The notes under the pieces are model-generated. The model searched no databases. It was not told the DNA's origin and saw only the letters and a program-made list of their open reading frames with translations. From Hyphochytrium catenoides (Eukaryota; Protista; Hyphochytriomycota): a DNA stretch of 64,000 nucleotides. Below, piece by piece: positions 2,775 to 19,049 of the stretch. A program made the position numbers and the translations under genes. The number at the start of each line of letters is the position of its first letter. Within the stretch, counting starts at the first letter, position 1. Where the stretch lies: the NCBI GenBank assembly GCA_900088475.1, contig FLMG01001274.1, positions 1 to 64,000 of the forward strand. The letters are read 5' to 3'.

Positions 2775-3625
2775 CTATTTCTTGCAGTTTGGCGCTTGGG
2801 AGGTTGAATCCCTGACCCAAGTGTTAGCTAGGTTTCGATACAATCGCGGCATGAAGGTCAATATATTCCGTTTCTTACCACTTGCTGATCCGTACGGCAG
2901 AGAGCTGATCGTTATAGGACTGATCGCCAAAACTTGTCCATGTGTGGAAGCAATATGGTGCTCCATCGTCTTTTCCATCGTAAAAAGCTTCCAGAAAATA
3001 GCCAGGCTTCACCCAGACAGAGCTGACCATGTCATTCATATTCAATAAGGAATCGTCATTACCCAGATCGTCCCAAAGGGTTGGCTCAGTGTAGCACTTA
3101 TACCGGGAGCCTCTACAAGATTGGGACAAGGAGTAGAGTGTGAGAAGCAGCGACTATTTTCAAGCCTGCCAGACAGTCCTTTCAGTCCTACCCGCACTGT
3201 ACGTCTGAATAGACACAGGCCACTACATCTTGACCATAAGAGCGTGGCTGTTCGCAGGAAGAAAGCGTTTGTGTTGAGTAAGAGTTATGATCATTGACGA
3301 GGAACGTCCCAGCCCATAAGTATCCTGCTGGTAAGGCCATTGTTTTGGGCACTGACCCATATCTTATGGGTGAAGAATTCTTGGTCCCCTGGTTCTGACC
3401 ACTAGATTGTTTGGAGAAAGACTTCGTTGCTTTGTTGATAGCAGGCTTAACACCGCTATACTTTTTACTAGAACTCTTGAGATGGCGCTTTGCTTCAGCA
3501 TGGAGTTGGTGAACTTCGCCCTCCCCCGTCTCGGTAGTTGCGCGCACGCCATTATTCCGCTCGTCGCAGCACGCGATAACGAGGATGGCAAACAGCCATA
3601 TCCTCTGCATCAGCAAACACATCAT
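2775..3625 (-). CDS. Secreted protein, copy A: signal peptide, RHLK motif, Ser/Lys-rich linker, beta/gamma-crystallin-like domain (3 exons)
   Basis: Predicted exons are 3625-3192, 3112-2879 and 2811-2775, with GT-AG introns and a CTAAC branch point in intron 2. The spliced C-terminus reads ACVYSDVQCGGSRYKCYTEP...MNDMVSSVWVKPGYFLEAFYDG...YNDQLSAVRISKWDSTSQAPNCKK. Intron positions match the paralog at 5248-6155. Confidence 0.8.
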
Positions 3626-4581
3626 TTTTCTTCTCCTTTTTAGTAATCAACCAGTCCAATTAGCGCCACCAAAACTCCAGACACTAAGCTTGCGTCCGCG
3701 GTGGTAGTGGTGCTGGCCCTGCTGGTGTGACTCTACCCTTGCGGATTGAAGAATGAACAATGTCCCTGAGGGATAGCTAGTTCCGGTGGGGAGAGGTGAG
3801 GGTGGAATGGGGGCACCCGTGCTAACCTTTTCTTCCCTGCTGCCCTTCGTCGCTAGGTCAGACCGCCAAGGTGCAGCACTTCCCAATAGTTCTAAGGCAG
3901 AGGAGGATGGAGGGGAGAGGAGAGGAGAGCCTCCCATGACTCAAAGAAACAGCCTCATCTGGAGTGAGAAACAGAGTGACCGTATAGAGAGAGGAACAGA
4001 GAAACAGCACAATACGGAGCAGAGCACCCTCCACCTTCCTTCCAAGAGCTCTGGTCTTCGAGGAGACTAATATTTCCCTCGTACAGTAGTAGCTATGTGC
4101 TGAGTGCCCTTTTGCCCTACTCTATAGCTCTAGGAGGCCTCCTCCAGAAAGCTAATGACCTTGGTGGAGGAGGAGGGTACTAACTCCCTCGTGCTGCTTC
4201 TATTCTCTTCGTCTCTCGGCTTCTTCTCTTCCTATGTTCGTTTCCTGAGTAGTACGGAAGGTACTCCGACCATACTATTTCTACACTATTTGTACGCTAT
4301 ACGTCACCAACTCTTTCTACTACTGTTTTGNNNNNNNNNNNNNNNNNNNNNNNNNNNNNNNNNNNNNNNNNNNNNNNNNNNNNNNNNNGTGGACCTAGAA
4401 ACGCATTTCTTGGTGATGATATGTGCAGGCTCGGGCACTGTCCTGTCAAACTCAGAGAAGAAAGCGTGTCCTCCACACAGACAGAATGGCTGTATGGAGA
4501 GAGGCACAGTAGTTCTAGATTCTAGAACACCGCCGTCTTCCGTAACATTACAAGTAGGGAGGAGCTCCCTTTACGAATCCA

Positions 4582-4932
4582 CCTAACCCTAACCCTCGAG
4601 ATCTAGTACAGAAAAAAGAACTGTCACTGAACGTTGTTGGTGGTAGTTAACAGTGTAGTTCTAAACGTTGGTTCTATTGTACTGAGGCCAACTACTGGTG
4701 TCGAAAGTCTAGTTGTCGTCCTACATGCTGATAGTTCTACTGTTTCTCTAGAATTTTATAGAAGTACTCGGGGGCCGGAAGTAGTCGAACTACCGACTAC
4801 TAGTTCTACAGTTACGGAAGCATACAGTCCCATACCCAAGTTTCTTCATTCTCATCCTCCTCTCCATAATGAGAGACTACACTTCCAAACTTCAAACTTC
4901 TCTCCTTGTTGCTTATTAGGGTTAGGGTTAGG
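4582..4932. repeat. Segment bounded by 15-bp perfect inverted telomere-like (TTAGGG) repeats
   Basis: CCTAACCCTAACCCT at 4582-4596 and AGGGTTAGGGTTAGG at 4918-4932 are exact reverse complements. Confidence 0.6.
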
Positions 4933-5247
4933 CTCTCCTACAAGCCTTATTTGTGCTACGGCAGCTGGGCGGTCTCATCGAGCGAAGAAAGGGCAATAGA
5001 GAGATAAGCGAAGAAAACAACGCGGCTCCTGCTTCTTCTCTCCTCTCTCTTCTTGTCCGTCTCTTCCCACCATGAGCTACCATTCAGACATCTTGTTCAT
5101 TGTTCATTCCGCAATAATGGCGGCGTCACAACACCGAGCATCCACCACCGCCACCACCACCACCATCAAACTCGTCCACGCCCCCTCAAGACAGGGACTC
5201 TGGTGACGCTGCTGATGGACTTGATGAGTAAGGAGAATTAAGAAACG

Positions 5248-6155
5248 ATGCGCTTGCTATTTTGGAGCATTTTGCTGTATGCTATTCTCTTGATCGCTTG
5301 CGACCGAGAAAGACATAATGGTGTGGGCGCAACTACGAGTCAGAAGTGGGAGGACAATCCTCCTCATCTCAATGATGAATCAAGGCGCCACCTGAAAGGT
5401 GGTAGTCGAGGTGGTGGAGGAGGTGGTGGAGGTGGTGGTGGTGGCCGTGGTGGTGGTAGTAGGTTTGGTACAGGCGCAGGCGTTTTTTTTGGCACAAGTC
5501 GTAGCACTACCAGGACGGCCTCGAGCACTTCTACGTCTTATTATTATCCATACCTGGTCGGAGCCGCAGGAATAGGCACGGGAGGAGGGTTACTGGGTGC
5601 TCTTTTCTCCCTTGGGAAAAATGATGATACTGATCTGACGACCATGTATTCCTGCGACGTCCCCCGCCTTGTCTCCGAGGATGCAGTGGCCTGTGTCTAT
5701 TCAGACAGACAGTGCGGGTAGGACTAATGAAAGTAGTCCCCGACAGGCTCCGCTTCACACTCGCTGGTTCTTACATTTAACTTCTTGTCTCCAATGTTGT
5801 AGAGGCTCCCAGTATCATTGCTACACTGAGCCAACCCTTAGGGACGATCTGAGTGACCACGAGCTGAACGACATGGTCAGCTCTGTCTGGGTGAAGACTG
5901 GCTATTTGCTGGAACTTTTTATCGATGGAGTAGACGATGGAGCACCATATTGCTTCCACACATGGGGCAGTTTTGGAGATCAGCAGTACAATGATGAGTT
6001 CTCTGCCGTACGGATCAGCGAATGGTAAGAAACTGAATGTATCGACCACCTATTGCACCGCGAATTATGTATTAGAGTCGATCAGCCTTGCTAACACTTG
6101 GGTCATCAGGAACTCGACCTACTCTCCAACGCCAAACTGCACAGAATTTCACTAG
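5248..6155 (+). CDS. Secreted protein, copy B: signal peptide, RRHLK motif, Gly-rich linker, hydrophobic segment, beta/gamma-crystallin-like domain (3 exons)
   Basis: Predicted exons are 5248-5717, 5803-6024 and 6110-6155. The N-terminus is hydrophobic (MRLLFWSILLYAILLIAC). Motifs LNDMVSSVWVKTGYLLELFIDG and YNDEFSAVRI resemble Greek-key ND-x-x-SS motifs. Confidence 0.8.
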
Positions 6156-6654
6156 TAGCAAACGATTCAGTCGAGGCTTCCCTTCTTTTGATTATATAGA
6201 GGAGTGGGATAATGCAAAGACCAACAAGAGACCCGCTCCTGATGATAAACAAACTATAACAGAGTTGGTGCCTACAAGCTCAACGATCCCGCCCACGATG
6301 CCTGCAATTCCTTTCTTCTTCTCCGCCGAAGAATCTCAATAATGGGCGATCAGTGTATTATGTTCTTCATTATACAATCTGCATACTCTCCTGTGTCGTA
6401 GTACCACTAAACACTCCTTTATTCCACCGCCCGCGTCCATTGTTGGGTCCAGGTGAATAATAAAATAACAGAGACGGCGCTGCTCATGATAATGACGGCC
6501 TCCACCTGACCGAGAAGGAGCGACGAGGATGATGGATAGTCTTCATGAGCGAAGTGCTTTGGTCAGAGCTCTTCGTCGTTATCTATTCTATAAGAAAAGC
6601 CCTTACTACATCCATTTATAAATGATGAAGATTATATTATGAAGCGTGTCTAAC

Positions 6655-7237
6655 CTCTTTCTTTCTTTCTGTCTCTCTCTTTCTCTCCTCTCTTTCTCCC
6701 TCTCTCTCTCTCCCTCTCTCTCACTCTCTCTCTTTCTCTCTCTCTCTCCCATATTCTATGTTTACCCATCTCTCTTCAGCTTTATCTTTGTATTCTCTCT
6801 CCTTCTCTTTCTCTCTTTCTTTTCTCTCAAGGGCTTTTTCCTCTCTCTCTCTTTTTCCCAATTCTCTGGTTACGTCTGTATCTCTTGGCCTCTCTTTGTC
6901 TCGCTCTGTCTCTATTATCTATCGTCTCCCCCATTTCTCATTACTCTTCCTCGACTCTGACTCTCTCTGTATCATCAGTCTGACACGGGCGTTAATGAAC
7001 TCCCTATAATCACTGTACTAAACGCCGTGGTACTAGAACTATTGGTAGTTCTACCGTACTCGTACCAGTATTTTTCTTGGTAGTACGCCCAGAAGAAAGT
7101 GCGCCAATATTGATGATAGCTGAGGTCAGTAACTAGAGACTGATAACCGATAAAAAGTAGTTACTGTTGGGAGTGAGGGTGCATGCTGTATCTGTTCTGA
7201 TGAGAGCGTAAGAAATCCTTTGTGCCGGGGACATTTC

Positions 7238-7282
<45 letters not shown>

Positions 7283-7342
7283 CGTTTTTTTTTCTCTCTC
7301 TCTCTCGCTGTCTCGCACGCGCTCTCTCTTTTCTCTCTCTCT
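6655..7342. repeat. (CT)n-rich microsatellite and polypyrimidine tracts
   Basis: Long CT runs are visible at about 6655-6970 and 7235-7342. Confidence 0.85.
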
Positions 7343-7664
7343 GACGCCCGCGCTCGAGTTTCTACAATTCTCTTTTTTTGATGGTCATATCTTGCCGCAC
7401 AGTTCTGCTTCGCTCTGATGCTTGATTATCACCTTATCCTCCTCTGGTCAGCTGCAGTTGCTCATACCGCACCATGAATCCTAAGCAGTGAAAGCGCAGT
7501 CAGGACATCGTAGACGAAGAACGGCGTTGACAGAGGACGGCTGAGGGCCCTATGCATATGGAAGGCATCTGATAGTGACACAGCGGATCCTTTGTGTTCC
7601 TGTCAGTCGAAGCTGTTTGGCCGCGGCGGGTGGAGACGGGAGGAGGCGCAGTAACGATAGAGAG

Positions 7665-8015
7665 ATGGGCCAAGGATTGAGCAAACAGTGGAAGAAAATG
7701 AAGCGAAAGGCACCTCCTCCCCAGAGTGAGTCCTCAAGCGAGATACCTTCTCCTTCCACGTCCCTTAGAGATCAGCGTGACCGTGGGGGATCCGCCGATA
7801 GACATCACAGCGTAGACGTTGTCCCTCAAGGAAATGCGTCTGCAGATGCGTCAGAGGTTAATATCGAGATTCCTGCACCTGTCGGCTCTTCTCACGCCTC
7901 TCCCTTCTCTCCCACTTCTGGTGAGGGTGGAGGAGATGGGTCTGAGGGACTCTCGGGGCGTCTAAACTCCAAGGTAAAAGACAGACCATCGACTTTTCTA
8001 TATTCGCCCTCTCTG

Positions 8016-8058
<43 letters not shown>

Positions 8059-8107
8059 TTCTTNNNNNNNNNNNNNNNNNNNNNNNNNNNNNNNNNNNNN
8101 NNNNNNN

Positions 8108-8161
<54 letters not shown>

Positions 8162-11100
8162 CTCTTTCCCTCTCTTATCCCTTTCGCTCTCTCAACCCTT
8201 TCTCTCTAAAACACCCTCGTTCACCTGGCTCTCTCTTATGGTCCTTTCTCCCTCTCTTACCGCCATTCTTGTCCACAATCTTGGCAGAGACGACGCTTTC
8301 AGCCCAAATTCACCTTTACGCTCGAGGAAAGAAAGACTTCCATCCTCAGTTTTCTTAAAGATAAGAAAGAGCCATCGTTCTCCTCTCCCTTGTCCATCGA
8401 CCGGCAAGCAGTCGGTGTGAAGGGCGATAGGAGCAGCCCAATTGGCCAGGAAGTGGAGGAGGAGGACAACAGCAGCTCCAGCAGTGATGAGGAGGAGAGA
8501 GAGGACGAGAAGAGAAGGCAACAGGACGACAAAAAAGCAACAAAGCCCAAATTTGGACCTAAATTCACCTTTAAGCCTCAAGAGATCACAGAAGCGCTGA
8601 AGGCCACCAGGGAGACTTCTCCACTTTCTCCTACCTTCAAGGCCCCAGACGGGCTTGGGAAGAAGGAGAGGAGAGAGAAAAGCGGAGAGATAGTGGACAC
8701 GCCGAGGAGAAGAAAGGCCAAACTTCAAGGGAGAGAGGCGGCAACAGTGGACGTCTCAGACCTGGGCGTGGAAGTGCTGGACGACGAGGAAGACTTTTTC
8801 CCCTCCGAGTCAAGCTCTGGGGAAGGAGAACATGAGGAAGATGAACTCGAAGACTGGCTAGAAGAATTGGATGAGATGCCGGTAAGTAGCGGGCGGAAAC
8901 AAGGCGACCACTGAAGGCCTTGAACATGAGAAGTTATAAGTTATAATCAATATGGTGAGGGAAGGGAGACCAAGGGACATATCGAGACCTAGAGCAGGGG
9001 GCGGACACATCTTTACACGGTTAACACCAGGATGGGAATCGATATGAGGGGCCGCGAACGGCTTCTAGATTAGGGGCAACAGAGATGGTTAGGTTAAACC
9101 CTTTGCTCAGCACATGTATGATGCAGGAAGAAAACGAGAAGACAGAACCGGAAAGTGGCACCGAGGACTCAGAAGACGAGCATCTCACCCCTTACCTGCG
9201 GGTACGAAGTCTCAGTAGAAATCCGGGTTGCTCTATGGACTCATTTTCTCTTCTTGCTTTGAATGAGCTTTCTCCTTAACATACGTCCCTGATGTTCATG
9301 GGGCAAGCAGTGTAAGTCTATCGGTTAACATGAACACTCTTCTACTTCTCTAGGCAAACAAAGGATTGTATCAGATCATGCGGCAGGTGCAGCTTATTGA
9401 TAACTTGAGTCAGACGCAGCAGGAGCAGGTTCTGCAGGCACTAAAGCCTGGTAAGGTTCCCTTCTTATCTTCGATGATCATCAAAGCTCAACTTTGTGCC
9501 TTGCCTCTCTGGCTTTCTGATCTCCTCTCTCGACGCTGCTACCTCAAGCTACTTTTAAGAAAGGAGAAATCATTGTCCGCCAAGGAGATAGAGGAGATCG
9601 CTTTTATCTGATAACCTCCGGAGAGGCTGTGGTGTCCAAGAAAGTGGATGATGAAGAGGAGGAGAGAATGATCACCCATCTCCATGTGGGCCACTATTTT
9701 GGAGAGCTAGCACTAATCTATGACGATCCTAGAGTACGGCACCCTTTACGGCGTCACTGCCTTGCTCTTTCAGATCCTCCTCTTTTAGTCTTCTCTCTTT
9801 CTCCCTTCGCCTTCCTATATATCTTCAATTCTGCTATGAAATACGATTAGACGCCAGTCCTTCGTGCGCCAAAAGGCTGACGCTTCTCGTCTTTCCGATT
9901 GCAAGGGCTCTTCCTTTCCCCTCAACCTCGCAAGCACTGATCAATTCTCCTATTTACGGTCTAAGATTCCGTGAGCTTGGTCTATTTACAATTATGCTTA
10001 GGTGTCTCTGGTCCATAATAGCCTTGCCTGATTGTTCTTTTCTTCTATCAACATCAGACGGCAACTGTGACGGCGGTGACCGATGTGCAGTGTGTCTTTC
10101 TGACCGCTGCAGACTTCAGTAGGGCAGGGCAAGTGCACCTTTCTCTTATTATGAAACAGGTGACCTACTCACTGCCGCAACTGTCGTTCTAGGCGCATTA
10201 TCCCCTGTCTCTACGTGTCATCAGCCCTTCAGCTACTTTCTCGTCCCGTATTCTCTTCCTCTTTCGCTAGTGTTGTCATGGCTTCTTGCTTATAGATTCT
10301 TCTTCGTTGTCACACCTCTTTGTTGGTTGCCCGCGTTCTTCGCTTTCCCTACCGTGTATTGTCATCTGAAGCATGTTTGCCTGCAAGGTGCCTCTCCTCT
10401 CGCAACTTGACTCTCGCGAACAAGATATCATTTTGCGGATGCTCAAACCCGCCAACTTTAATGATGGTGACTACATCTGCAGACAGGTAAGAAGGGTGAC
10501 ATCTGTGTTGGCCCTTTGCCGACTGTTGTTGCGGGCCAAACTTGAATCATACTGCCCTTCGTATCAATATTCTGTCTATTTTCTCATGTGAGCTGTCATG
10601 CTGAGTGTTACTGTCTGTGGGTCTGGCTTGCTTTGTTCTTTTAGGGTGATGAGGGCGATCGGTTCTACATTATTACAAAGGGAGAAGTTGCCATCACCGA
10701 GAACCGGCCTGATGGGGCCGAGAAGGAGCTCACCAAAGTGTATGAGGTGAGTACGCCGACAGAGTGATAAAAAAAACTATGGGAGGCTTTTGAGGAGAAC
10801 AAACATACGTAGACATGAAGACAATGCCTCCTAACTGTCAAGACTAGAGAAGGGCATAGCAGTAGGGGGACAAGGGAGAGAAGTCCCTTACCAGCTGAGA
10901 AGATGACGGCCTACAATATACTTCTCTAACTCTATTTGCCTTCCACAGGGGCACTGTTTTGGAGAGCTCGCCCTCATCCATAATGAACCAAGGGTATGTC
11001 TCGATTTTCTCACTGCCTCTCGTCGACCTTGACCACCATTTTTCTGCCTTTTCGGTCCTGGCCCTCTAACCTTGCCCATGGTCGCCTCTTTACGCTATAA

Positions 11101-14100
11101 CGTACTCGCCTATGGGGGACCGGGTGACTTCTCATCGGATGGCTGGCTGTCTTCTTAGTCCTAGCCTGGGCCTTGCACGTTGCACCCCAGAATGCCGTTC
11201 TCCTTTTCTTCACTTTGCACGATAGCAACCCGGCGAGGTCCCTGTTTTCCAAAATGCCCTGAAGCTTTTGCCATCTCTTACCTTGTTTGTGGGTCTCTAT
11301 TACCTTGATGCTTCATTTTCGAGTGCTAGAGTGCTATCTTCCGTGGCAGGCATCGTTTCTCTCTTCACTGTTCATAATATCTCTTTGCGACCAAGGTTGC
11401 GAATGTCAAGGCCGTAGGTCATGTCAAGTGCATGTATCTCAGCAAGCAGGATTTTCAAAAAGCGCTTAGCACTGAGAAGTTCCAGAAGTATATTGAGAAG
11501 TTCTCAGAACAAAGAAAGAAGACCCGTGCCTTGCGGTCTTTGAAGAACAATGAACAGAAGACTGAGGCTCACGCTACATTGTAAGATTAGCGGGAATCAG
11601 GGAGGCCACCGTCCCTCGTATCGCTGCGACTCTCATTTCACTCCTTGATTGTCTGTCCCTGCGGCGACTCTCCTTTCACTCCTTGATGGTCGGTTCCCTT
11701 AATCCTTAGCCGTTCCTCTATCTCAAACGAGACCGCCAGGGCGATAAGGCTCATTGTCTCCCGATAAGCTATAGCTCCTGGCAAAATAGTCATCCCTCTC
11801 TCTTCAGACTTGTACAGCGAGCTAATTGGTTCTCTGCTGATCTCCGTCAATCTTGCACCTGTTCCTTTCATTGACCTTCCTAACAAACGTCGGTTGGCTT
11901 CACTTACAGGTCGCGAGACAGCTCCTCGGAGCCAAGGACTTCTAGCTCCTTTGCTAGGTGGGGGTAATTCTTGATACTTTGTGTATCTGTTGTCACTGGT
12001 GCACACCTGGGTGTGAACTTGCTCGTCTAGTGCCATGGCTTGCCGTATTATGACTGTTCATATCTAGTACATTTGGTCCTAGTGTCTACTCTCCTCTGGC
12101 TGAGTTCCAACGGTTGGAGCGTCCGAGCCAACCATTGGTTCACTCTTGATAAACTTTCTCTTCTTCAGCTCAACGATTGCTTATTCATTTTAGGGATCTC
12201 AGTTCCCCTAACCTTCATCCACCTCTGCCTGCACTGTCTGCTCCTGCACTACCCTCTACTTCTTAGCCTAAAGGAGACCAACAAGCTCGTGAAGTTGCGC
12301 CTAGCGAATGGTAACAAGGTAGTAAACAAATACGTAATCAAGAGAGACCTGGGGAAAGGCACCTTTGGTCGAGTAGTGCTAGGCCAAAGCGAAGATAACG
12401 GGAAGCTGTACGCCATAAAAATTCTCAGCAAGAGCTTCTCACAGCATTTACTAGGGAAGAATAGGCCTTTAGAGGTAAGTTAGAGCTGGACCCTTCGCCT
12501 CCACTTTTTCTTTCTGCTGCACCGCTTCCTCCTCCGCTCCCGTTGCTCCTTGCTCAATTTCTTTCCCGGTAGTCCCGAGACTCGTCAATAAAAGACTATA
12601 TGATTGGATAGGGTGAGATGCACAGGGAGATCGCTATCATGAAGAAGCTGAACCATGAGAATATTGTCAGGTTGTATGAGGTCATAGATGACCCGTCCTC
12701 GCATAACATCTATCTTGTCATGGTACGAAATCCGTCCTAGCTTATCCTGGCTCTCTTCCCTTCTTCTCTCCCTCTCTTAATCTCAATATCTCGGTTCCTC
12801 TTGTCTTTCCTGGTTCTCTCATTTTTCTTGGTCTTCCTTGCTTCCTCGTTTACTCAGCTGGGTGAATCGTACTTTGCTTCGTCTTCTTCACTTGTTGATT
12901 GGAACTCCCAAACCTGGCATGACTTCTGCTCCCTGTCAACCTCTAGGAATATTGCGAAAAGGGACCGTTGATGGGAGGAAAGGCATGCATCGACCCCTAT
13001 CCAGAGGAGATTGCCCGCAAGTATTTCGTCCAGCTAATTCATGGCATTAGGTATTTACACTTCCAGGTGCGTGCGAAAAAGAGAAAGAAATAGAGATTCG
13101 AAGGTGATGCCAAATGGTAGCGTCTAGGAGCAGTAGCTTATAGTAGCGGACAAAGTGGGAGCTGAGGAACGAGTCAAAGGACTATGAGCCCAATAACCCA
13201 AACGAAAAGATGGGAGAGAGAGAGAAGGGGAGAGACAGATGGAGAGTCGCCCTCTTAATGTCTCGCTTCCTCCCTCCTTCTGGCGTCTCCTTGTGACTTG
13301 CAGCAAATTGTCCATCGTGATCTGAAGCCAGAGAACATCTTGTTGTCTGCAGATGACAAGGTGAAGATCAGTGACTTTGGGACTGCCAGAGCTGTCATCA
13401 ATGAGGAGTTCCTTACCGAGGTGAGGGGCGACTGCGCTATTTAGCCTTGGGCGTTGTCCTGGGACACGAAGCAGTTTGATGGCTATCACTGAACTTGTCA
13501 CTCCTCTAACTAGTCTGCGCTGCGCCGATACGTCTCTTTTATCTGTAAGGTTAAAGGTACACCAGCGTTTATGGCTCCAGAGCTTTTAGATGTGAATGCG
13601 CGCTATGCCGGGCCTGCAGTAGACGTTTGGTCTCTTGGAGCCACCTTGTATATGATGGTACGTGCTCCAACCTTCGCCGTGCAGCAGGAGAGCCTCAGCA
13701 ATACAGCTGCCTTAAGGGACTCTCCTTCTTATTCCTCTTGGGAGTAGAGCAGAAAGCCTTTGACAGTCTATCGATCATGGCGTATCTTGTTCCTTGACCA
13801 TTTCACTTCAAGGTTATCGGCCGTCCTCCTTGGCTAGCAGACAACGAGATCGTTTTGGCTGACCGTGTGCAGCATGACGAGTTGACCTTCCCAGAGGAGC
13901 CGCAGCTAGATCCGCACCTACGGAACTTGCTGCAGAGAATGCTAACTAAAGACCCGGCAAGGCGGATCACGCTCAACGAGGTTAGATACCGTCAAGGCTT
14001 CCTGTTCCCACTGTCTATCGTTCTCAATTCCCTGTCTTATCTCCTTCTCAAACCTAGCACTTCTGCTGTCTTTTCAAGGGAGGGGCACAGCTTTTTGAGC

Positions 14101-17100
14101 GAATAAGTCTGCTGATGGTTCCCACTTTCTCTCTTTTCCTCCCTTTCTCTTATGCTCCTGTTTTCTGGACTTAGGTTGCACAGCATGAGTGGGTCACTTG
14201 TGAAGGCACAGACGCCTTAGTGTTCGACGAGTATGGCGCAGCTGATGAGCTGACAGTCAGCAGAGAGGAGAGCGCAGATGCCATCAGCGAGCTGCCTCAG
14301 AGAGTGAACGTCCAGCACCTGGGCGACTCCCTTGCGCATGCACACTCTCTCTTGGCGGACGCGCAAGCGGGTCCAGCGCCGTCGGGCAAGCTATCTGTGG
14401 TCCTCGAGGTACGACAACACAGAGGGTATGCAGACGTGAAACAAAGAAAGACTGAATGGAGAGACGAGCTTGGGTAGGAGCAATGCAAGGACACGTGATT
14501 GGCTTGACAGAGAGCTAGCTGGTGGTATCCTCAAGTTATTGGAGTGGATGCTTTATCCGATGTCTCTTGCTGCCATATCCCTTCGCTGATACTGCAGGGC
14601 AACAAAGCTATCCTACAGCCTCGCCCTTCCGGAACTCCGACATCCTTGGGCTCTACTGGCAGTATGACTGACCCTTCCTATGAGACTCGGAGAGTCATTG
14701 GTAGGCACCGACTTGTCTAATTAGCGTGGCGCATTCATATCGTGGCTGTACTTGCTTTCTCTCCTTTCATTATTGTGCAAAAGCTCATAATGCTCTTTCA
14801 AGATCTTTCAAAGGTCTAGCGCTCTATTGGGCTTTGCAATCCCAAGGAATCCTACTTGCCACTTTGAGTCAACGTGCCGGCCACCTTTTTCCTTCGTCTG
14901 ACTATCGCGCTTCATTTCGTTCGTAGGTGGTTGGAGGAAGCAAAAGGTCCTGGAATATCTAGCGGGACATGAAGGTCTAAGCGAGAAGGCGCGAGAAGTG
15001 CTAATGGACCAGAATAACACACGTAGGAGAAAGTACCGATCTTGCTATTTGTGATCCCGCTAAGATCGTTTTCTTGGTCCTTGGATGGTTGTTAGCTGGC
15101 TAATAGCCCGTCATTCGTCGTCCTTGATGATGTGCCATCGCTAACCGTGCTACTTCTGGCCCACCGCTCTTTTGTCTCCTTCGTAGGCAAGATTGTTTTT
15201 GCTCCTAACCAAACCGAGGTTAGCGAGATTGTCCTGGCACAACCCTCGTCTCCCGCTAGAAAAAGTGGGCGCTCCTCTCCCACAGGCACGGCGAAAAGTC
15301 TGGAGACAAGAACTTTATCCAGAAAGAAGGTAAAAGAAGTTGAAGAAAGCTTTGGACCCGGGTCCTGGAGGTTGGGAAGAGAGGGGTCGCCTCCGTGCTC
15401 ATCGTTGTAATTGGATTGGCACCACTGACACGAACTGACTGCATAGGACTTTCTGATGATGACGGCGGAGGTAATGAAAGGCAGCAGCGGGGAGATTCAG
15501 GCACGGAAGGTTCTTTTCCAGCCGAAAGAGAACTTTTCGCACGCGTCGGCAGCTTCAGGGCTCACAGACGGAGGAAGGCTTTCATCAAAGGTGTGACGGG
15601 GCAAAACGACTCAATGAATAACAGGGAGGGACAAGCTATTGCTCTTATTGCTGCCCGCACTATCTTCGTTATTCCTTCACATTGCCGTGATTGCCATGCC
15701 GTTTCACCCTTCGGCTTTTCTTCTTCGTTGTCTTTCCCACACCGCGTTGTCACTTGTTAAAAGGCGGGCTGTTCCTTCTTGAGCTTTCTAAGTGTAAAAG
15801 AGCGCCCATCCCACCCTGTACACAATCCTCTTCTTCTCTTATGCCTTCCAGCATTCTGCACCTCATTGTCCTATTATCTTCAGGAGCTCCGACGGAGGAC
15901 TGGCAGTGGCTCACAGAGCATGCGAAGATCTTCTCATCACGGCTCCTTTACCTCCTCCCCACAAAGAAAGGAGAGTGCTGACTCCTCCCAACAGAGCAGC
16001 TCCCCTATCCCGCTTTCCGCGGCCTCTAATTCCTCCTTCTCATCCTCCCAAGCTCATATGAAGCCCTGGCAAGAGAACGGCGACATCTTTGATGATGAAG
16101 CCATGGGGGCCGTCGTGGTAGAAGAGGAAGAAGAGGGAGAAGGAGAAGTGAGCGAAAGCGACAGTGACCTAGGCAGTGATCTTGACGAAGTGGCCGAGGA
16201 CGTGGATATCGAAGACACATTCAATGAGCTCATTCATACGCCACGGTGGGTAAAAAGACTCTCTTCTCTTGTGCCTTTATTCTCCTTCTTCCACTTCCTT
16301 TAACATAACGTTTCGCCTTTTTTCTCTCTCTTTGTGTGCCCTTTTCTCTCTCTTTTTGTGGCTCTCTCTGTCTCCGTCTGTCTTCTTGATTGAGTCCCAC
16401 TTGTCCTTACCTTTTGCCGCGTATTTGGCATTTTCGCGTATCAGAGAGCTGGACGATGAACAAGACGATGAAGAGCTCCAACCTTTAAAAAGCAGCAGCA
16501 GTTGTCTTCAAGTCACTGCAGGAAAAGAGAAGTACAACTCTATCCTCGGGTTGAGAGTATGTTCTGTCGGAGAAAAGGGAGTTAGAGAGACGATGGAGGA
16601 CTGCCACACTGTCATTCCCAGCTTGACAGATGTACGTGTCGCCGCTTACTCTTATATTCTCTCTCACCTATCGGACACAGCTTTATCAATCTTGTTGTCC
16701 GCAGCTTCTAGCTCTCACACAGTTGGTCGTTGGCTGGCTGTGTCCCCTGTTCCTCTCGGCTTCTGTTGGTAGTCTCTCATTGCCATCTCTAAGTCTTGAC
16801 CTTCTTGACCCTCTAGACACCACTCGAGTGCCCCGGAGACGCGAAGGCATCCTTCACTCTTCCTTCTTCTACCTATGGATCTCTCGGCTATTTCGCAGTC
16901 TATGATGGACACAATGGATCTTCAATCAGCGCTTTCTTGAGAGAAAACCTCCATTTATATATCGCCCACGCCATCCTGAGGCACAAAGAGAAAGGAGGAG
17001 ACCTTAACAATATTGAAGATCCTATCAAAGTGGGGTGTGCTAATGCTGAGAGCAAGGTAAGGCCCGCAGCAGCGTAAGAAATGTCTTGGTCTCTCTTTTG

Positions 17101-18587
17101 GACGTCCCTACCTCCGCCAGCTCCCTGGTCCCAATACCTCTTGTCTCCCGCCTTCAGTTCCATACGTGTCCCTCGCCCTTCCTACCAATAGCTTCCCCTT
17201 ATCAGCCCAAGATCCTTCACTGTTAACGGTCATCTCTCTGCCAAGGTGCCATTGCTCTCATATGCTGAAATGACTTCTTTGGTACAGTGTCTGCTGTTTC
17301 GCCTGTATCCTGGCCGCTCACGCCTCAATTCTCGGTTCTCTCTTCACGCCTCCTTTCCCTGCTGCTGACGCAGATTCTAGAGTTTGAGCACGTTCGGCAG
17401 TTAGAGTACTCTCGCTCAGCGGCGCGCCGAGGCCTTTCTTCTCCTGTCCATTTTGCAGGGTCCACCGCAGCTGTCCTCGTCCTGCACAGACCCCCGGGAG
17501 AGAGTAAGTGTTACTCTAGATAGAGAGAAGGCCAAAGGAAGGAAGGAGGCGGGACTCTCTCCCTCTCTCATGGTTCAACGTTCGCTTACTACTTGCTCTC
17601 GTCTTTAGAGGAAATCCGGGCCTATGGAGTCAATGTAGGGGACAGCCGCCTGGTCCTTTCGAGAGGAGGAAAGGCACTATCTTTATCTGACGACCACAAG
17701 CCTACCAATGTAAAAACTGTCTTACTCTATTAGCATTTGTCCGTCTCCTTCTCCCTTTCAGCTCAATTTTGGATGCTTTATCCCTCGTACTGACCAGTTT
17801 CCATTACTTTCTTTTCGTCGAGTCTTCCAACATAGACTCTCTCTGCAGAGTAACATCTAACTCTAAAGCACACGATCTGGCTCTCTGCTTCTCACGTTCT
17901 ATACGTTCACAGCCATCCGAAAGGAAACGGATTGAAAGCTGTGGCGGCTGGGTTCATAACGGCCGGCTAAACGGCGTGCTGGCCGTGTCTAGGGCCTTCG
18001 GAGATGTAATGCACAAGGAGGAGAATAACCCTCTCATAGCTATACCGGTGAGTCCATAAGAATCTTGCTAGCCCCACGCCTGAGTGAGGCTTCGGAGATT
18101 GAAAGAAAGCATGCTGATGAAAGTATAGTGAGACGAGAATAAAGAACAGGCGTGTTCTTTTCATAGCAAAGGAACTGACCTTTCTTGCTGCAGGAGATCC
18201 ACATTGAGACCCTAGGTCCTGAGGACGACATGGTCATTTTGGCCAGCGACGGCGTTTGGGACGTCCTTTCCTCTCAGCAGGTAAACCGCCAACTGTCTTG
18301 ACCTCTGTCGCTTGATGCAGGTTCCTTCTCATTCCTTTAGGTCCCGTGTTTATGCCGACCAGTTGACTGATGAGACTTTTTGGCTAACTTTGGCTGATCT
18401 CCTTGTCGCTACCTTCCTCTTCGCTTTCTTTTAGAGTGTGAACTATGTCCGCAGACGTCTAGCAGAGCACAGGGACCTGCAGGTGGCAGTCTCGGAGTTA
18501 GCAGCAAAGGCTGTCAAAATATTTAGCCATGACAATGTCTCAGCGATCGTCGTCGCTCTTCAGCAAACAGAAGACGCTGCTCCATAG
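7665..18587 (+). CDS. Multi-exon (about 29 exons) fusion: 2x cNMP-binding domains, CaMKK-family Ser/Thr kinase, PP2C phosphatase; predicted N-myristoylated
   Basis: The start is MGQGLSK. CNB-A has [17 protein letters not shown] and [12 protein letters not shown]|TATV; CNB-B has ICRQ|[13 protein letters not shown] and [12 protein letters not shown]|VANV. The kinase has [47 protein letters not shown] and GTPAFMAPE. The PP2C has [43 protein letters not shown] and HDNVSAIVV, then a stop at 18585-18587. Linker exons at about 14.4-16.5 kb are less certain. Confidence 0.85.
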
Positions 18588-19049
18588 TCAACCGTGAAGA
18601 TATAGCTCTTTCTGCTTGGTTAGAGTCTCTGCACGGCATTATTATGGAATATCTCAGATGTCAAGTCTCACAGAGAAACGTGTGGGGCTATGGGCATAGT
18701 AACATCATCATAAGTATTGATTAGGAGACCTTGTCCTCGCTTGAATATAGGAGATTTAGGGAAAGAAGAAGACTAAGTGAGCTAGGCTCGCGACGCGAAC
18801 AGTAGAAGAACTCAGGAGAGGAATGATAGCAGGATAGAGATGTAGAGAGTACGGCAGGCAATCACTTCCACAGAGACTGCCTCTCAAGCACCAGCTTCGA
18901 ATATAACTCTCTATCCCCTTCCTACCACGAGCTAGGGAGTAACAAGTAGCGTACTCAGGAGACGAAGAGAAGAGGAGGATGTCAAGGCTCGCTTTGCCTT
19001 TCTGAATTGAAAGACCGAGGTACTACCTCCCTCTCTTTCATCCCGTTTT

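What the first reader, a model, noticed from the sequence alone, without database searches (positions are those of the whole stretch)
7665..18587. Single-polypeptide signalling switch: myristoyl + 2 cNMP sensors + CaMKK kinase + PP2C phosphatase
Seen in sequence: the kinase (K, HRD, DFG, APE) and the PP2C (MED, DGH, SDG, DN) both retain their catalytic motifs, behind two intact phosphate-binding cassettes. Established knowledge: cNMP domains normally control AGC kinases (PKA/PKG), CaMKKs are normally Ca/CaM-regulated, and the plant PP2C-cNMP-kinase protein has a different order with an AGC-like kinase. Inference: this is a membrane-tethered, cyclic-nucleotide-gated writer/eraser, possibly acting on an AMPK/SnRK-type T-loop, since CaMKK phosphorylates and PP2C dephosphorylates that site. 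Similar architectures may exist uncharacterised in oomycetes.
Basis: partly seen in the sequence, partly recalled or inferred. Interest (0 to 1): 0.75.

Follow-up and report, generated by a model that had tools for sequence, protein, structure and literature searches.

The report
Cyclic-nucleotide-sensing kinase-phosphatase fusion gene
This is a real, intact 29-exon gene for one large, probably lipid-anchored protein that joins two cyclic-nucleotide sensors, a CaMKK-type kinase and a PP2C phosphatase; the same design is conserved and already catalogued in oomycetes, but its function has never been tested.

Summary
I built a model of 29 exons on the + strand (7665-18587), with GT-AG at every intron and no internal stop. 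It encodes about 1579 aa.

- **Domain order:** MGQGLSK start, two cNMP-binding domains with intact phosphate-binding cassettes, a CaMKK-family kinase, a roughly 390-aa linker, then a PP2C with all its metal-binding motifs.
- **Assembly gap:** the gap at 8064-8107 lies inside intron 1, within a (TC)n microsatellite. The exons on either side are both in phase 0, so the gap does not touch the coding sequence.
- **One gene, not two:** Albugo, Phytophthora and Aphanomyces proteins have the same domain order. In P. infestans the gene is a single uninterrupted 5580-nt ORF. Four splice junctions in the linker fall inside sequence blocks that are colinear with those proteins.
- **Already in the literature:** the P. 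sojae ortholog Ps568223 is listed in a 2024 phosphatome paper with a single mRNA, high in zoospores and cysts.
- **Kinase class:** solved CaMKK1/2 are the best matches, and no AGC kinase is in the top 60.
- **No direct RNA evidence:** no RNA run was listed for this genome.
- **Earlier scan result:** the scan had already found a sibling CaMKK-PP2C fusion without cNMP domains on another contig of this genome (s1-341978).

Verdict: a new member, probably from a hyphochytrid, of a known but untested family. The proposed writer/eraser role on an AMPK-type T-loop remains inference.

The parts
7665..7973 (+). Exon 1. Start codon, N-myristoylation consensus MGQGLSK, then a basic run KQWKKMKRK.
   Evidence: First in-frame ATG after a stop. 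MGQxxS/T is also the start of the Phytophthora, Aphanomyces and Thraustotheca proteins, and MGDRVSK that of Albugo.
7974..8287 (+). Intron 1. It holds a (TC)n microsatellite and the assembly gap at 8064-8107.
   Evidence: GT...AG ends, with phase 0 on both sides.
8288..8881 (+). Exon 2. Low-complexity N-terminal region with two PKFTF repeats and an acidic [10 protein letters not shown] block.
   Evidence: The DWL block aligns with the oomycete orthologs.
9127..9201 (+). Exon 2b (phase 0-0), ending ...[10 protein letters not shown].
   Evidence: It matches the ortholog block SLTPF/Y-x-Q that lies just before the first cNMP domain.
9354..9450 (+). Exon 3. Start of cNMP domain A.
   Evidence: 61-73% identity to the oomycete orthologs.
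9549..9733 (+). Exon 4. Core of cNMP domain A, with cassette [12 protein letters not shown].
   Evidence: Pfam PF00027, 1.7e-14.
10058..10159 (+). Exon 5. End of cNMP domain A (TATVTAV...DFSR).
   Evidence: Colinear with the orthologs across the junction to exon 6.
10388..10486 (+). Exon 6. Start of cNMP domain B.
10645..10746 (+). Exon 7. cNMP domain B ([10 protein letters not shown]).
   Evidence: PF00027 match in the own-genome search; alignment.
10949..10993 (+). Exon 8. Cassette B: [12 protein letters not shown].
11396..11580 (+). Exon 9. End of cNMP domain B and the hinge to the kinase. It ends in phase 2.
   Evidence: The split codon TT|C joins exon 10 in frame.
12267..12474 (+). Exon 10. 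Kinase N-lobe with GKGTFGRV and the YAIK lysine.
   Evidence: Pfam Pkinase. This exon was the query that found the orthologs.
12612..12722 (+). Exon 11. Helix C glutamate and the CaMKK-type EVIDDP motif. An alternative acceptor lies 6 nt downstream at 12618.
   Evidence: Best solved matches are CaMKK1 (37.2 bits) and CaMKK2 (34.2 bits); the next family scores 25. The acceptor was chosen by fit to the orthologs.
12947..13066 (+). Exon 12. Kinase hinge and helix E.
   Evidence: Pfam Pkinase.
13304..13420 (+). Exon 13. Catalytic loop HRDLKPEN and DFG.
   Evidence: Pfam Pkinase, 4.2e-13.
13550..13657 (+). Exon 14. Activation segment GTPAFMAPE.
   Evidence: Pfam Pkinase, 6.3e-10. CaMKK2 scores 30.7 bits, just behind Tribbles at 32.4.
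13813..13980 (+). Exon 15. Kinase C-lobe.
   Evidence: Best solved match is CaMKK1 at 28.9 bits; the next family scores 23.6.
14175..14408 (+). Exon 16. Kinase end (HEWVT) and the first conserved linker block.
   Evidence: Aligns with the orthologs beyond the kinase end.
14598..14700 (+). Exon 17. Linker.
   Evidence: The junction to exon 18 falls inside the conserved block RVI-G|GWRKQKV.
14927..15022 (+). Exon 18. Linker; conserved block WR..K...GH..LSEK.REVL.DQ.
15187..15329 (+). Exon 19. Linker, ending ...LSRKK.
   Evidence: The junction to exon 20 falls inside the most conserved linker block, LSRKK|DFLMMTAEV.
15447..15590 (+). Exon 20. Linker; DFLMMTAEV...RKVLFQ block.
   Evidence: 42-46% identity to the oomycete orthologs.
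15884..16245 (+). Exon 21. Ser-rich and acidic linker, ending TFNELIHTP.
   Evidence: The split codon CG|A joins exon 22 inside the conserved block TF.EL..TP..LD.
16445..16631 (+). Exon 22. PP2C motif 1, RETMED.
16817..17056 (+). Exon 23. PP2C motif YDGHNG.
   Evidence: Pfam PP2C, 0.0082.
17374..17503 (+). Exon 24. PP2C (GSTAAV).
17609..17709 (+). Exon 25. PP2C (NVGDSR, DDHKP).
   Evidence: Pfam PP2C, 4.7e-07.
17913..18047 (+). Exon 26. PP2C ([21 protein letters not shown]).
   Evidence: Pfam PP2C, 1.2e-12.
18194..18280 (+). Exon 27. PP2C (SDGVWDVL).
   Evidence: PF00481 match in the own-genome search.
18435..18587 (+). Exon 28. PP2C end (HDNVS) and the TAG stop.

Best explanation
Window 7665-18587 (+) is one protein-coding gene of 29 exons. 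The genome is an intron-rich relative of the oomycetes, most likely Hyphochytrium catenoides.

**The product (about 1579 aa), from N to C terminus:**
- an N-terminal myristoylation signal;
- a low-complexity region;
- a PKA-R/PKG-like pair of cyclic-nucleotide-binding domains;
- a catalytically complete CaMKK-family kinase;
- a roughly 390-aa linker with four short conserved blocks;
- a catalytically complete PPM/PP2C phosphatase.

It is the ortholog of a family conserved across the oomycetes, for example P. infestans XP_002896858.1 and P. sojae Ps568223.

**How it most likely works (inferred, not shown):**
- Without ligand, the cNMP pair holds the kinase in check.
- Binding of cGMP or cAMP releases the kinase. 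The Arg-Thr in cassette A favours cGMP.
- As measured for the rice PKG-PP2C protein, ligand binding probably also shifts the balance away from the phosphatase.
- One membrane-anchored molecule would then write or erase the same phosphosites, depending on cNMP level.
- CaMKK-family kinases phosphorylate activation loops, so the most likely substrates are the T-loops of AMPK/SNF1- or CaMK-type kinases.
For: **Gene model.** All 28 introns are GT-AG, phases are consistent and there is no internal stop.

**Domains.**
- Pfam finds the three domain types on single exons.
- Exon 10 retrieved Albugo (1743 aa), Phytophthora (1804 and 1859 aa) and Aphanomyces (1364 aa) proteins, plus an unnamed 1581-aa protein. 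All four carry cNMP x2, Pkinase, then PP2C in that order.

**One gene rather than two.**
- The P. infestans gene is one ORF of 5580 nt that translates exactly to the 1859-aa protein.
- A second single-ORF case sits on a Logan contig.
- In a local alignment, my model is about 50% identical to the Aphanomyces and Phytophthora proteins from the first cNMP domain to well past the kinase end.
- Four linker splice junctions fall inside conserved blocks.
- The MGxxxS/T start is shared by five of the orthologs.

**Domain classes.**
- Kinase: the ortholog domain scores 206.6 bits against CaMKK2 and 181.5 against CaMKK1. The next best are CDPK at 145 and LKB1 at 137, and no AGC kinase is in the top 60. 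My own exons 11 and 15 also match CaMKK best.
- cNMP pair: closest to PKA RI-alpha, at 115 bits.
- PP2C: closest to PPM1A/B.

**Literature.**
- Ps568223 has CAP 161-288, CAP 292-399, STKc 493-751 and PPM 1389-1744. It has a single mRNA and is high in zoospores and cysts.
- In rice PKG, cGMP promotes the kinase and inhibits the PP2C.
Against: - There is no RNA evidence from this genome.
- The junctions exon 1/2, 16/17 and 20/21 are not supported by conservation.
- No ligand, substrate or enzyme activity has been measured for any member of this family.
- The CaMKK-type Arg-Pro insert and a recognisable calmodulin-binding segment are absent, so substrate choice may differ from animal CaMKK.
- Cassette B has Arg-Val where the orthologs have Arg-Thr.
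- The linker gave no confident fold, so how the three modules communicate is unknown.
Confidence: 0.8

Rival explanations
1. The locus holds two genes in this genome: a cNMP-regulated CaMKK-like kinase that ends near 14.4 kb, for example by read-through of the exon 16 donor to the stop at 14475-14477, and a separate PP2C gene that starts at a Met in exon 21.
For: No transcript data exist for this genome. Reading through the exon 16 donor reaches a stop after 22 codons. Exon 21 contains in-frame Met codons.
Against: - Exons 17-20 are conserved with the stretch that lies between kinase and PP2C in the single-ORF oomycete proteins.
- Four linker junctions sit inside conserved blocks.
- All six linker junctions keep the reading frame.
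- The P. sojae ortholog is reported to have a single mRNA.
Confidence: 0.05
2. It is one protein, but the PP2C works mainly in cis. It would remove autophosphorylation from the kinase or from the conserved linker site (K/R)RxLSRKK, making a self-resetting timer rather than an eraser of the kinase's substrates.
For: - The linker carries a conserved basic RxxS-type block, LSRKKDFLM(V/M)T(S/A)EV.
- The fusion guarantees 1:1 proximity of the two enzymes.
- A second CaMKK-like-PP2C fusion without sensors exists in the same genome.
Against: Nothing tested here separates cis from trans action. In the rice PKG-PP2C protein the summary describes the two activities as a phosphorylation/dephosphorylation switch and names GAMYB as the kinase substrate.
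Confidence: 0.2
3. The cNMP domains do not gate the kinase. They are either ligand-free structural remnants or regulate only the phosphatase, and the kinase is controlled by Ca2+/calmodulin as in animal CaMKK.
For: The kinase is CaMKK-type. The conserved linker block (V/I)I.(A/G)WR..K.V is basic and hydrophobic around a Trp, which is the general look of a calmodulin site (my reading).
Against: - Both cassettes keep the Gly-Glu and Arg that hold the ligand, and they are conserved from this genome to Albugo.
- Pfam found no calmodulin-binding family on the linker exons that were scanned.
- The region straight after the kinase, where CaMKK has its calmodulin site, is acidic here.
Confidence: 0.1
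4. The N-terminal exon is joined to the rest by a misassembly at the gap, so the myristoylation signal belongs to another gene.
For: The gap at 8064-8107 lies between exon 1 and exon 2, and the sequence around it is a simple repeat.
Against: - The orthologs start with the same MGQxxS/T motif.
- Both gap flanks are the same (TC)n repeat.
- The implied intron is 314 nt, within the 98-686 nt range of the other introns of this gene.
Confidence: 0.03

Closest known systems
Oomycete cNMP-cNMP-CaMKK-like-PP2C proteins: P. infestans XP_002896858.1 (UniProt D0NVW2), P. sojae Ps568223, Albugo laibachii CCA25284.1, Aphanomyces stellatus KAF0685155.1
   Same: - Same domain order.
- About 50% identity from the first cNMP domain to past the kinase, and about 30% in the PP2C.
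- The same conserved linker blocks and the same MGxxxS/T start.
   Different: - This gene has 28 introns; the P. infestans gene has none.
- The linker is shorter here.
- Cassette B has Arg-Val rather than Arg-Thr.
- A basic run follows the myristoylation signal only here.
- No member has been studied functionally in the papers I could search.
Plant PKG (rice and Arabidopsis PP2C-cNMP-cNMP-kinase protein; Shen et al. 2019, as summarised in PMC11638329)
   Same: One polypeptide with a PP2C, two cNMP domains and a kinase. For rice, cGMP was measured to promote the kinase and inhibit the phosphatase.
   Different: The order is reversed, with the PP2C first and the kinase last. The plant kinase is PKG/AGC-like, whereas this one is CaMKK-type. 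This genome also holds loci in the plant-like order, on contigs C18 and C2567.
Animal CaMKK1/CaMKK2, and by my own knowledge plant GRIK and yeast Sak1/Tos3/Elm1
   Same: Best sequence match for the kinase domain. The EV(I/L)DDP motif after helix C and GTPAFMAPE are shared.
   Different: - No long Arg-Pro insert between strand 3 and helix C.
- No recognisable calmodulin-binding tail.
- Instead it carries N-terminal cNMP sensors and a C-terminal phosphatase.
PKA regulatory subunit RI-alpha and PKG cNMP-binding pairs
   Same: A tandem of two cNMP domains with intact cassettes. The best solved match for the tandem is RI-alpha, at 115 bits.
   Different: Here the pair is fused to a non-AGC kinase. 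No obvious RRxS/A inhibitor site lies in front of domain A.
CaMKK-like kinase-PP2C fusion without cNMP domains on contig C2410 of the same genome (earlier scan finding s1-341978)
   Same: - A CaMKK-type kinase is followed by a PP2C on one strand.
- It is the best in-genome match for both domains of this gene.
   Different: It has no cNMP domains and a different N-terminal region. A common origin for the two fusions is not resolved by the PP2C tree.

Membership tests
Oomycete cNMP-cNMP-CaMKK-like-PP2C family | Domain order: cNMP, cNMP, Pkinase, long linker, PP2C. | tested here: met
   Own exons; orthologs; P. sojae Table S3.
Oomycete cNMP-cNMP-CaMKK-like-PP2C family | Colinear sequence similarity along the whole length, including the linker blocks. 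| tested here: met
   Local alignment of the spliced model to fetched proteins: 50% identity over about 780 aa, with linker blocks shared.
Oomycete cNMP-cNMP-CaMKK-like-PP2C family | One transcript and one polypeptide. | tested here: inconclusive
   The relatives have a single ORF and a published single mRNA. For this genome there is only an in-frame exon model, because no RNA run was listed.
CaMKK family of protein kinases | A complete ePK catalytic core: Gly loop, Lys, helix C Glu, HRD, DFG, APE. | tested here: met
   Read from the sequence.
CaMKK family of protein kinases | Closest similarity is to CaMKK rather than to other kinase groups. | tested here: met
   - Ortholog domain: 206.6 and 181.5 bits against CaMKK2 and CaMKK1, versus 145 for the next family.
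- Own exons 11 and 15 match CaMKK best.
- Exons 10 and 14 do not discriminate between families.
CaMKK family of protein kinases | Arg-Pro-rich insert between strand 3 and helix C (the animal type). | tested here: not met
   Only about 19 residues lie between the AIK lysine and the helix C Glu, and they hold a single Arg-Pro. That the insert is a feature of animal CaMKK is my own knowledge.
CaMKK family of protein kinases | Autoinhibitory and calmodulin-binding segment after the kinase. | tested here: inconclusive
   - Pfam gave no hit on the linker exons that were scanned.
- The segment after HEWVT is acidic.
- A basic Trp-containing block lies further on, but its calmodulin binding was not tested.
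CaMKK family of protein kinases | Phosphorylates the activation-loop Thr of AMPK, CaMKI or CaMKIV. | not testable with these tools
   Needs an enzyme assay.
cGMP/cAMP-dependent protein kinases (PKG/PKA, AGC group) | A cNMP-binding pair with intact phosphate-binding cassettes. | tested here: met
cGMP/cAMP-dependent protein kinases (PKG/PKA, AGC group) | An AGC-type catalytic domain. | tested here: not met
   No AGC kinase is among the best 60 solved matches of the ortholog kinase domain. The UniRef name 'cGMP-dependent protein kinase' therefore does not fit the kinase class.
PPM/PP2C phosphatases | PF00481 fold signature. | tested here: met
   Exon hits at 1.2e-12 and 4.7e-07; three exon hits in the own-genome search; ortholog PP2C at 2.4e-46.
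PPM/PP2C phosphatases | Metal-binding acidic residues in the motifs R..MED, DGH, DG.WD and DN. | tested here: met
   RETMED, YDGHNG, SDGVWD and HDNVS are all present and conserved in the orthologs. Assigning these motifs to metal binding is established knowledge.
Plant PP2C-cNMP-kinase (PKG) family | Order PP2C, cNMP, cNMP, AGC-like kinase. | tested here: not met
   The order is reversed and the kinase is CaMKK-type.
N-myristoylated proteins | Met-Gly start with Ser/Thr at position 6. | tested here: met
   MGQGLSK here; MGQRLST, MGQKGSK and MGDRVSK in the orthologs.
N-myristoylated proteins | Actual lipid attachment and membrane location. | not testable with these tools
   Needs labelling or localisation experiments.

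The most novel reading that the evidence does not exclude
In hyphochytrids and oomycetes, cyclic nucleotide rather than Ca2+/calmodulin would be the input to the CaMKK-to-AMPK/CaMK axis. One membrane-anchored molecule would carry both the T-loop kinase and the opposing PP2C. cNMP would switch them reciprocally, as in rice PKG, giving a self-contained on/off switch for downstream kinases in the swimming-spore stage. The recurrence of CaMKK-PP2C fusions in this genome, with and without sensors, would then mark a lineage-wide design principle.
Probability: 0.2. Interest if true: 0.7.

Novelty: new member of a known kind. Interest (0 to 1): 0.4.

Why it matters
Kinase and phosphatase activities that oppose each other within one polypeptide are rare among eukaryotic protein kinases. 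So far the only measured case I found is the plant PKG-PP2C protein.

This family would be a second, differently built case. Its kinase belongs to a class that normally sits at the top of the AMPK/CaMK cascades and is normally driven by calcium.

Finding it intact in a probable hyphochytrid places the fusion before the split between hyphochytrids and oomycetes. In Phytophthora the ortholog and most cyclic-nucleotide genes are expressed in sporangia, zoospores and cysts, the dispersal and infection stages. The protein is therefore a reasonable candidate regulator of zoospore behaviour.

The practical value here is modest. This report adds a checked gene model, an orthology statement, and a clearer kinase classification than the database names give.

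Tried and rejected
- **RNA evidence.** The look-up of sequencing runs listed no RNA run for 12200-18600, so read laying could not be used. None was listed; that does not mean none exists.
- **Joined model.** Exons were searched one at a time by reference. The joined model existed only inside my own scripts, for frame checks and for local alignment to proteins already fetched.
- **Non-discriminating exons.** Exon 10 matched many kinase groups about equally in the solved-structure search. Exon 14 put Tribbles marginally ahead of CaMKK.
- **Linker fold.** An AlphaFold2 model of the Aphanomyces kinase plus linker (alignment A1) gave a confident kinase, but pLDDT stayed mostly below 50-70 in the linker. 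It showed one long helix after the kinase and a beta hairpin at the DFLMVTSEV...RKVLFQ block. I judged this too weak for a fold search and ran none.
- **Linker families.** Pfam found nothing on the four linker stretches I scanned (14175-14474, 15344-15757, 15761-16300 and the N-terminal exons).
- **Common origin with the C2410 fusion.** Summed tblastn scores favour it, but the PP2C tree leaves C2410 unresolved. It is not shown.
- **Ochrophyte relatives.** The Phaeothamnion and Discosporangium proteins are partial cNMP-kinase models and their contigs end there. Whether a PP2C follows cannot be told.
- **Paralog loci C18 and C2567.** tblastn with this gene's kinase found no kinase there. Only motif scans gave hints.
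- **Literature.** Searches found no functional study of this oomycete family.
- **Complex prediction.** I ran none, because I make no binding claim that it could settle.

Full report
**What is in the sequence**

The region is a multi-exon eukaryotic gene on the + strand. Stop-free stretches in all three forward frames carry recognisable pieces of cNMP-binding, protein-kinase and PP2C domains. Pfam confirms them on single exon-bearing stretches given by reference:
- cNMP_binding: 1.7e-14 (9521-9847);
- Pkinase: 4.2e-13, 6.3e-10, 5.7e-05, 0.002 and 0.02 on five stretches;
- PP2C: 1.2e-12, 4.7e-07 and 0.0082 on three stretches.

ATG 7665 is the first in-frame ATG after a stop, and the TAG is at 18585-18587.

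**The gap**

The Ns at 8064-8107 are flanked on both sides by (TC)n. They lie inside the first predicted intron (7974-8287; donor AAG|GTAAAA, acceptor cttggcag|A). Exon 1 ends in phase 0 and exon 2 starts in phase 0, so the coding frame does not depend on the gap length.

The implied intron is 314 nt. The other 27 introns of the gene measure 98-686 nt, with a median of 196.5. The join of exon 1 to exon 2 could not be checked with reads, because no run was listed. It has indirect support:
- the MGxxxS/T start is shared with the orthologs;
- exon 2 carries the acidic DWL block that the orthologs also have before the first cNMP domain.

**Gene model**

I placed exon borders by hand at GT and AG sites and checked them by script.

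Alignment to the orthologs then prompted two changes:
- A further phase 0-0 exon at 9127-9201 (...[10 protein letters not shown]) matches the ortholog block SLTPF/Y.Q and belongs in the model.
- The exon 11 acceptor 6 nt upstream (12612) fits better than 12618.

The final model has 29 exons, a 4740-nt CDS and 1579 aa, with every intron GT-AG and no internal stop. Exons are richer in purines than introns (0.553 against 0.396).

The joined protein was used only inside my scripts.

**Domains and catalytic residues**

- **cNMP domain A** (9369-10129) has the cassette [16 protein letters not shown]. **Domain B** (10388-11467) has [16 protein letters not shown]. Both keep the Gly-Glu and the Arg that hold the ribose-phosphate.
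- **The kinase** (12331-14198) has [12 protein letters not shown], the helix C Glu, [20 protein letters not shown] and HEWVT.
- **The PP2C** (16545-18563) has RETMED, YDGHNG, NVGDSR, DDHKP, SDGVWD and HDNVS. This is the full set of motifs that carry the metal-binding acidic residues in PPM phosphatases (established knowledge). All are conserved in the orthologs.

**Kinase class**

Against solved structures:
- Exon 11 matches CaMKK1 (37.2 bits) and CaMKK2 (34.2 bits) best; the next family scores 25.
- Exon 15 matches CaMKK1 best at 28.9 bits; the next family scores 23.6.
- Exon 10 does not discriminate between families.
- Exon 14 puts Tribbles at 32.4 bits, just ahead of CaMKK2 at 30.7.

The whole kinase domain of the P. 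infestans ortholog is unambiguous. It scores 206.6 bits against CaMKK2 and 181.5 against CaMKK1. CDPK follows at 145 and LKB1 at 137, and no AGC kinase is among the best 60.

Two animal CaMKK features are missing. One is the long Arg-Pro insert. The other is a recognisable calmodulin-binding tail: the sequence right after HEWVT is acidic.

The cNMP pair is closest to PKA RI-alpha (115 bits) and less close to PKG. The PP2C is closest to PPM1A/B.

**One gene or two**

No RNA run was listed for this genome, so the answer rests on comparison.

A whole-library search with exon 10 found, at the top, proteins from Albugo laibachii (1743 aa), Phytophthora infestans (1804 and 1859 aa) and Aphanomyces stellatus (1364 aa, cut inside the PP2C). 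Further down it found an unnamed 1581-aa protein. Pfam shows cNMP x2, Pkinase and PP2C in the same order in all of them.

The evidence for a single gene is as follows:
- The P. infestans gene spans 3001-8580 of locus L007. It is one uninterrupted ORF that translates exactly to the 1859-aa protein.
- The 1581-aa protein is likewise one ORF on a genomic Logan contig.
- My model aligns at about 50% identity with the Aphanomyces and Phytophthora proteins, from the first cNMP domain to well beyond the kinase end. It aligns again at about 30% over the PP2C.
- The junctions 17/18 (RVIG|GWRKQKV), 18/19, 19/20 (LSRKK|DFLMMTAEV) and 21/22 ([13 protein letters not shown]) lie inside blocks that are colinear with the single-ORF proteins.

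An intergenic region would not behave like this. I put the chance of a single gene at about 0.93.

**Literature**

- The P. infestans kinome paper (PMC3019232, 2010) lists cNMP-binding domains in AGC and CAMK kinases, and PP2C domains in AGC, CAMK and OTHER kinases. In its text it discusses only the plant-like PP2C-cNMP-pseudokinase proteins.
- The P. sojae phosphatome paper (PMC10925823, 2024) gives Ps568223 as CAP 161-288, CAP 292-399, STKc 493-751 and PPM 1389-1744. It states that read mapping supports a single mRNA and places the gene in a cluster with high mRNA in zoospores and cysts.
- I found no functional study of this family.
- For rice PKG, which is a PP2C-cNMP-kinase protein, cGMP was reported to promote the kinase and inhibit the phosphatase (PMC11638329, summarising Shen et al. 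2019).

**Linker**

Between kinase and PP2C lie four conserved blocks separated by low-complexity sequence:
- a helix-prone block after the kinase (ES..AI..IP..I...L..SLA.AH);
- a basic Trp block, (V/I)I.(A/G)WR..K.V...GH..LSE;
- the strongest block, LSRKKDFLM(V/M)T(S/A)EV...G.(Y/I)Q.RK(V/I)(L/M)FQ;
- an acidic run ending TF.EL..TP.

An AlphaFold2 model of the Aphanomyces kinase plus linker gave pLDDT above 90 for the kinase but mostly below 50-70 for the linker. No extra folded domain can be claimed.

**Mechanism (inferred)**

By analogy with PKA, PKG and the rice protein, the cNMP pair most likely restrains the kinase until ligand binds, and the ligand may at the same time lower phosphatase output. 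The Arg-Thr in cassette A, and in both cassettes of the oomycete orthologs, is the signature linked with cGMP preference in PKG (my own knowledge). Overall similarity is nearer to PKA-R, so the ligand is open.

CaMKK-family kinases are activation-loop kinases, and PPM phosphatases remove such phosphates (established knowledge). A shared T-loop substrate of AMPK/SNF1 or CaMK type is therefore the most economical guess, but nothing here tests it. A cis-acting reset of the kinase by its own phosphatase is a live alternative.

**Context in the genome**

The assembly has 61.0 Mb in 4759 contigs. The published Hyphochytrium catenoides assembly has 4758 scaffolds plus a mitochondrial genome and a mean intron length of 208 bp. 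Together with the oomycete-like best hits, this makes H. catenoides the likely source. That is inference from assembly statistics, not a sequence match.

The genome also holds:
- a stand-alone CaMKK-like kinase on C3977;
- a second CaMKK-like kinase followed by a PP2C, without cNMP domains, on C2410, which matches earlier scan finding s1-341978;
- two loci in the plant-like order, PP2C then cNMP, on C18 and C2567.

C2410 is the best in-genome match for both the kinase and the PP2C of this gene. A PP2C tree does not resolve whether the two fusions share an origin.

**Verdict**

The gene is a new, intron-rich member of a family that is present in public databases and listed in two surveys, but that nobody has tested. 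The functional idea is attractive and testable, but it is inference.

- Novelty: new member of a known kind.
- Interest: 0.4.

Noticed in passing
G000:C2410:9500-16000 (locus L014; ORFs 117-2612 and 3381-5312, + strand): A second CaMKK-like kinase (EVMDDP, HGD in place of HRD, DFG, GTPAFMSPE) continues after one intron into a complete PP2C (FDGHSG, NVGDSR, CDGLWD, ADNVS). It has no cNMP domains. The best solved match for the kinase is CaMKK2 at 108 bits, against 82 for the next family.
   Followed up: partly
G000:C3977:2500-6500 (locus L013; ORF 1259-2557, - strand): A stand-alone CaMKK-like kinase with EVIDDPNEDKL, HRDIKPEN and DFG. The fused protein is therefore not the only CaMKK-type kinase in this genome.
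   Followed up: partly
G000:C18 about 87000-90500 (-) and G000:C2567 about 9000-13300 (-) (loci L001-L006): PP2C and cNMP-binding hits lie on one strand in the plant-like order, PP2C first. C2567 has an AGC-like GTAEYLAPE downstream. On C18 no kinase motif was seen, which may fit the pseudokinase described for P. infestans PITG_08304 and PITG_09375 and in scan note s1-342120.
   Followed up: partly
G000:C4479:11358-12289 (+) and 16724-17389 (+) (locus L025): PP2C hits are followed about 4.5 kb downstream, on the same strand, by a kinase hit. This may be another phosphatase-kinase pairing. No gene model was made.
   Followed up: no
window 8288-8881 (exon 2): Two copies of a short basic motif, [14 protein letters not shown] and [14 protein letters not shown], occur in the low-complexity N-terminal region. 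They are not seen in the oomycete orthologs.
   Followed up: no
window 7683-7709: A basic run, KQWKKMKRK, follows the myristoylation signal directly. This gives the look of a myristoyl-plus-basic membrane anchor, and the oomycete orthologs lack it.
   Followed up: no
window 12606-12618: Two acceptor AGs lie 6 nt apart before exon 11. Both are in frame and differ by Gly-Glu. The ortholog alignment favours the upstream one.
   Followed up: partly
protein P0003 (Albugo laibachii CCA25284.1), catalytic loop: The Albugo ortholog has HFD where the others have HRD (IIHFDIKPEN). Its other kinase motifs are intact.
   Followed up: no
locus L012 (Logan SRR27217539 contig, ORF 273-5018): An unnamed organism with Asn/Ser-rich low-complexity inserts carries the same four-domain order in one ORF. 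It starts MSKYLKK, without the Met-Gly signal.
   Followed up: partly
window 7204-7415, 7990-8160 and 16300-16400: (TC)n and CT-rich tracts recur upstream of the gene and in its introns. The introns are pyrimidine-rich on the coding strand, with a purine fraction of 0.40 against 0.55 in the exons.
   Followed up: partly
whole genome G000: The assembly statistics (4759 contigs, 61 Mb) match the published Hyphochytrium catenoides assembly (4758 scaffolds plus a mitochondrion). This naming rests on those numbers and on oomycete-like best hits only.
   Followed up: partly
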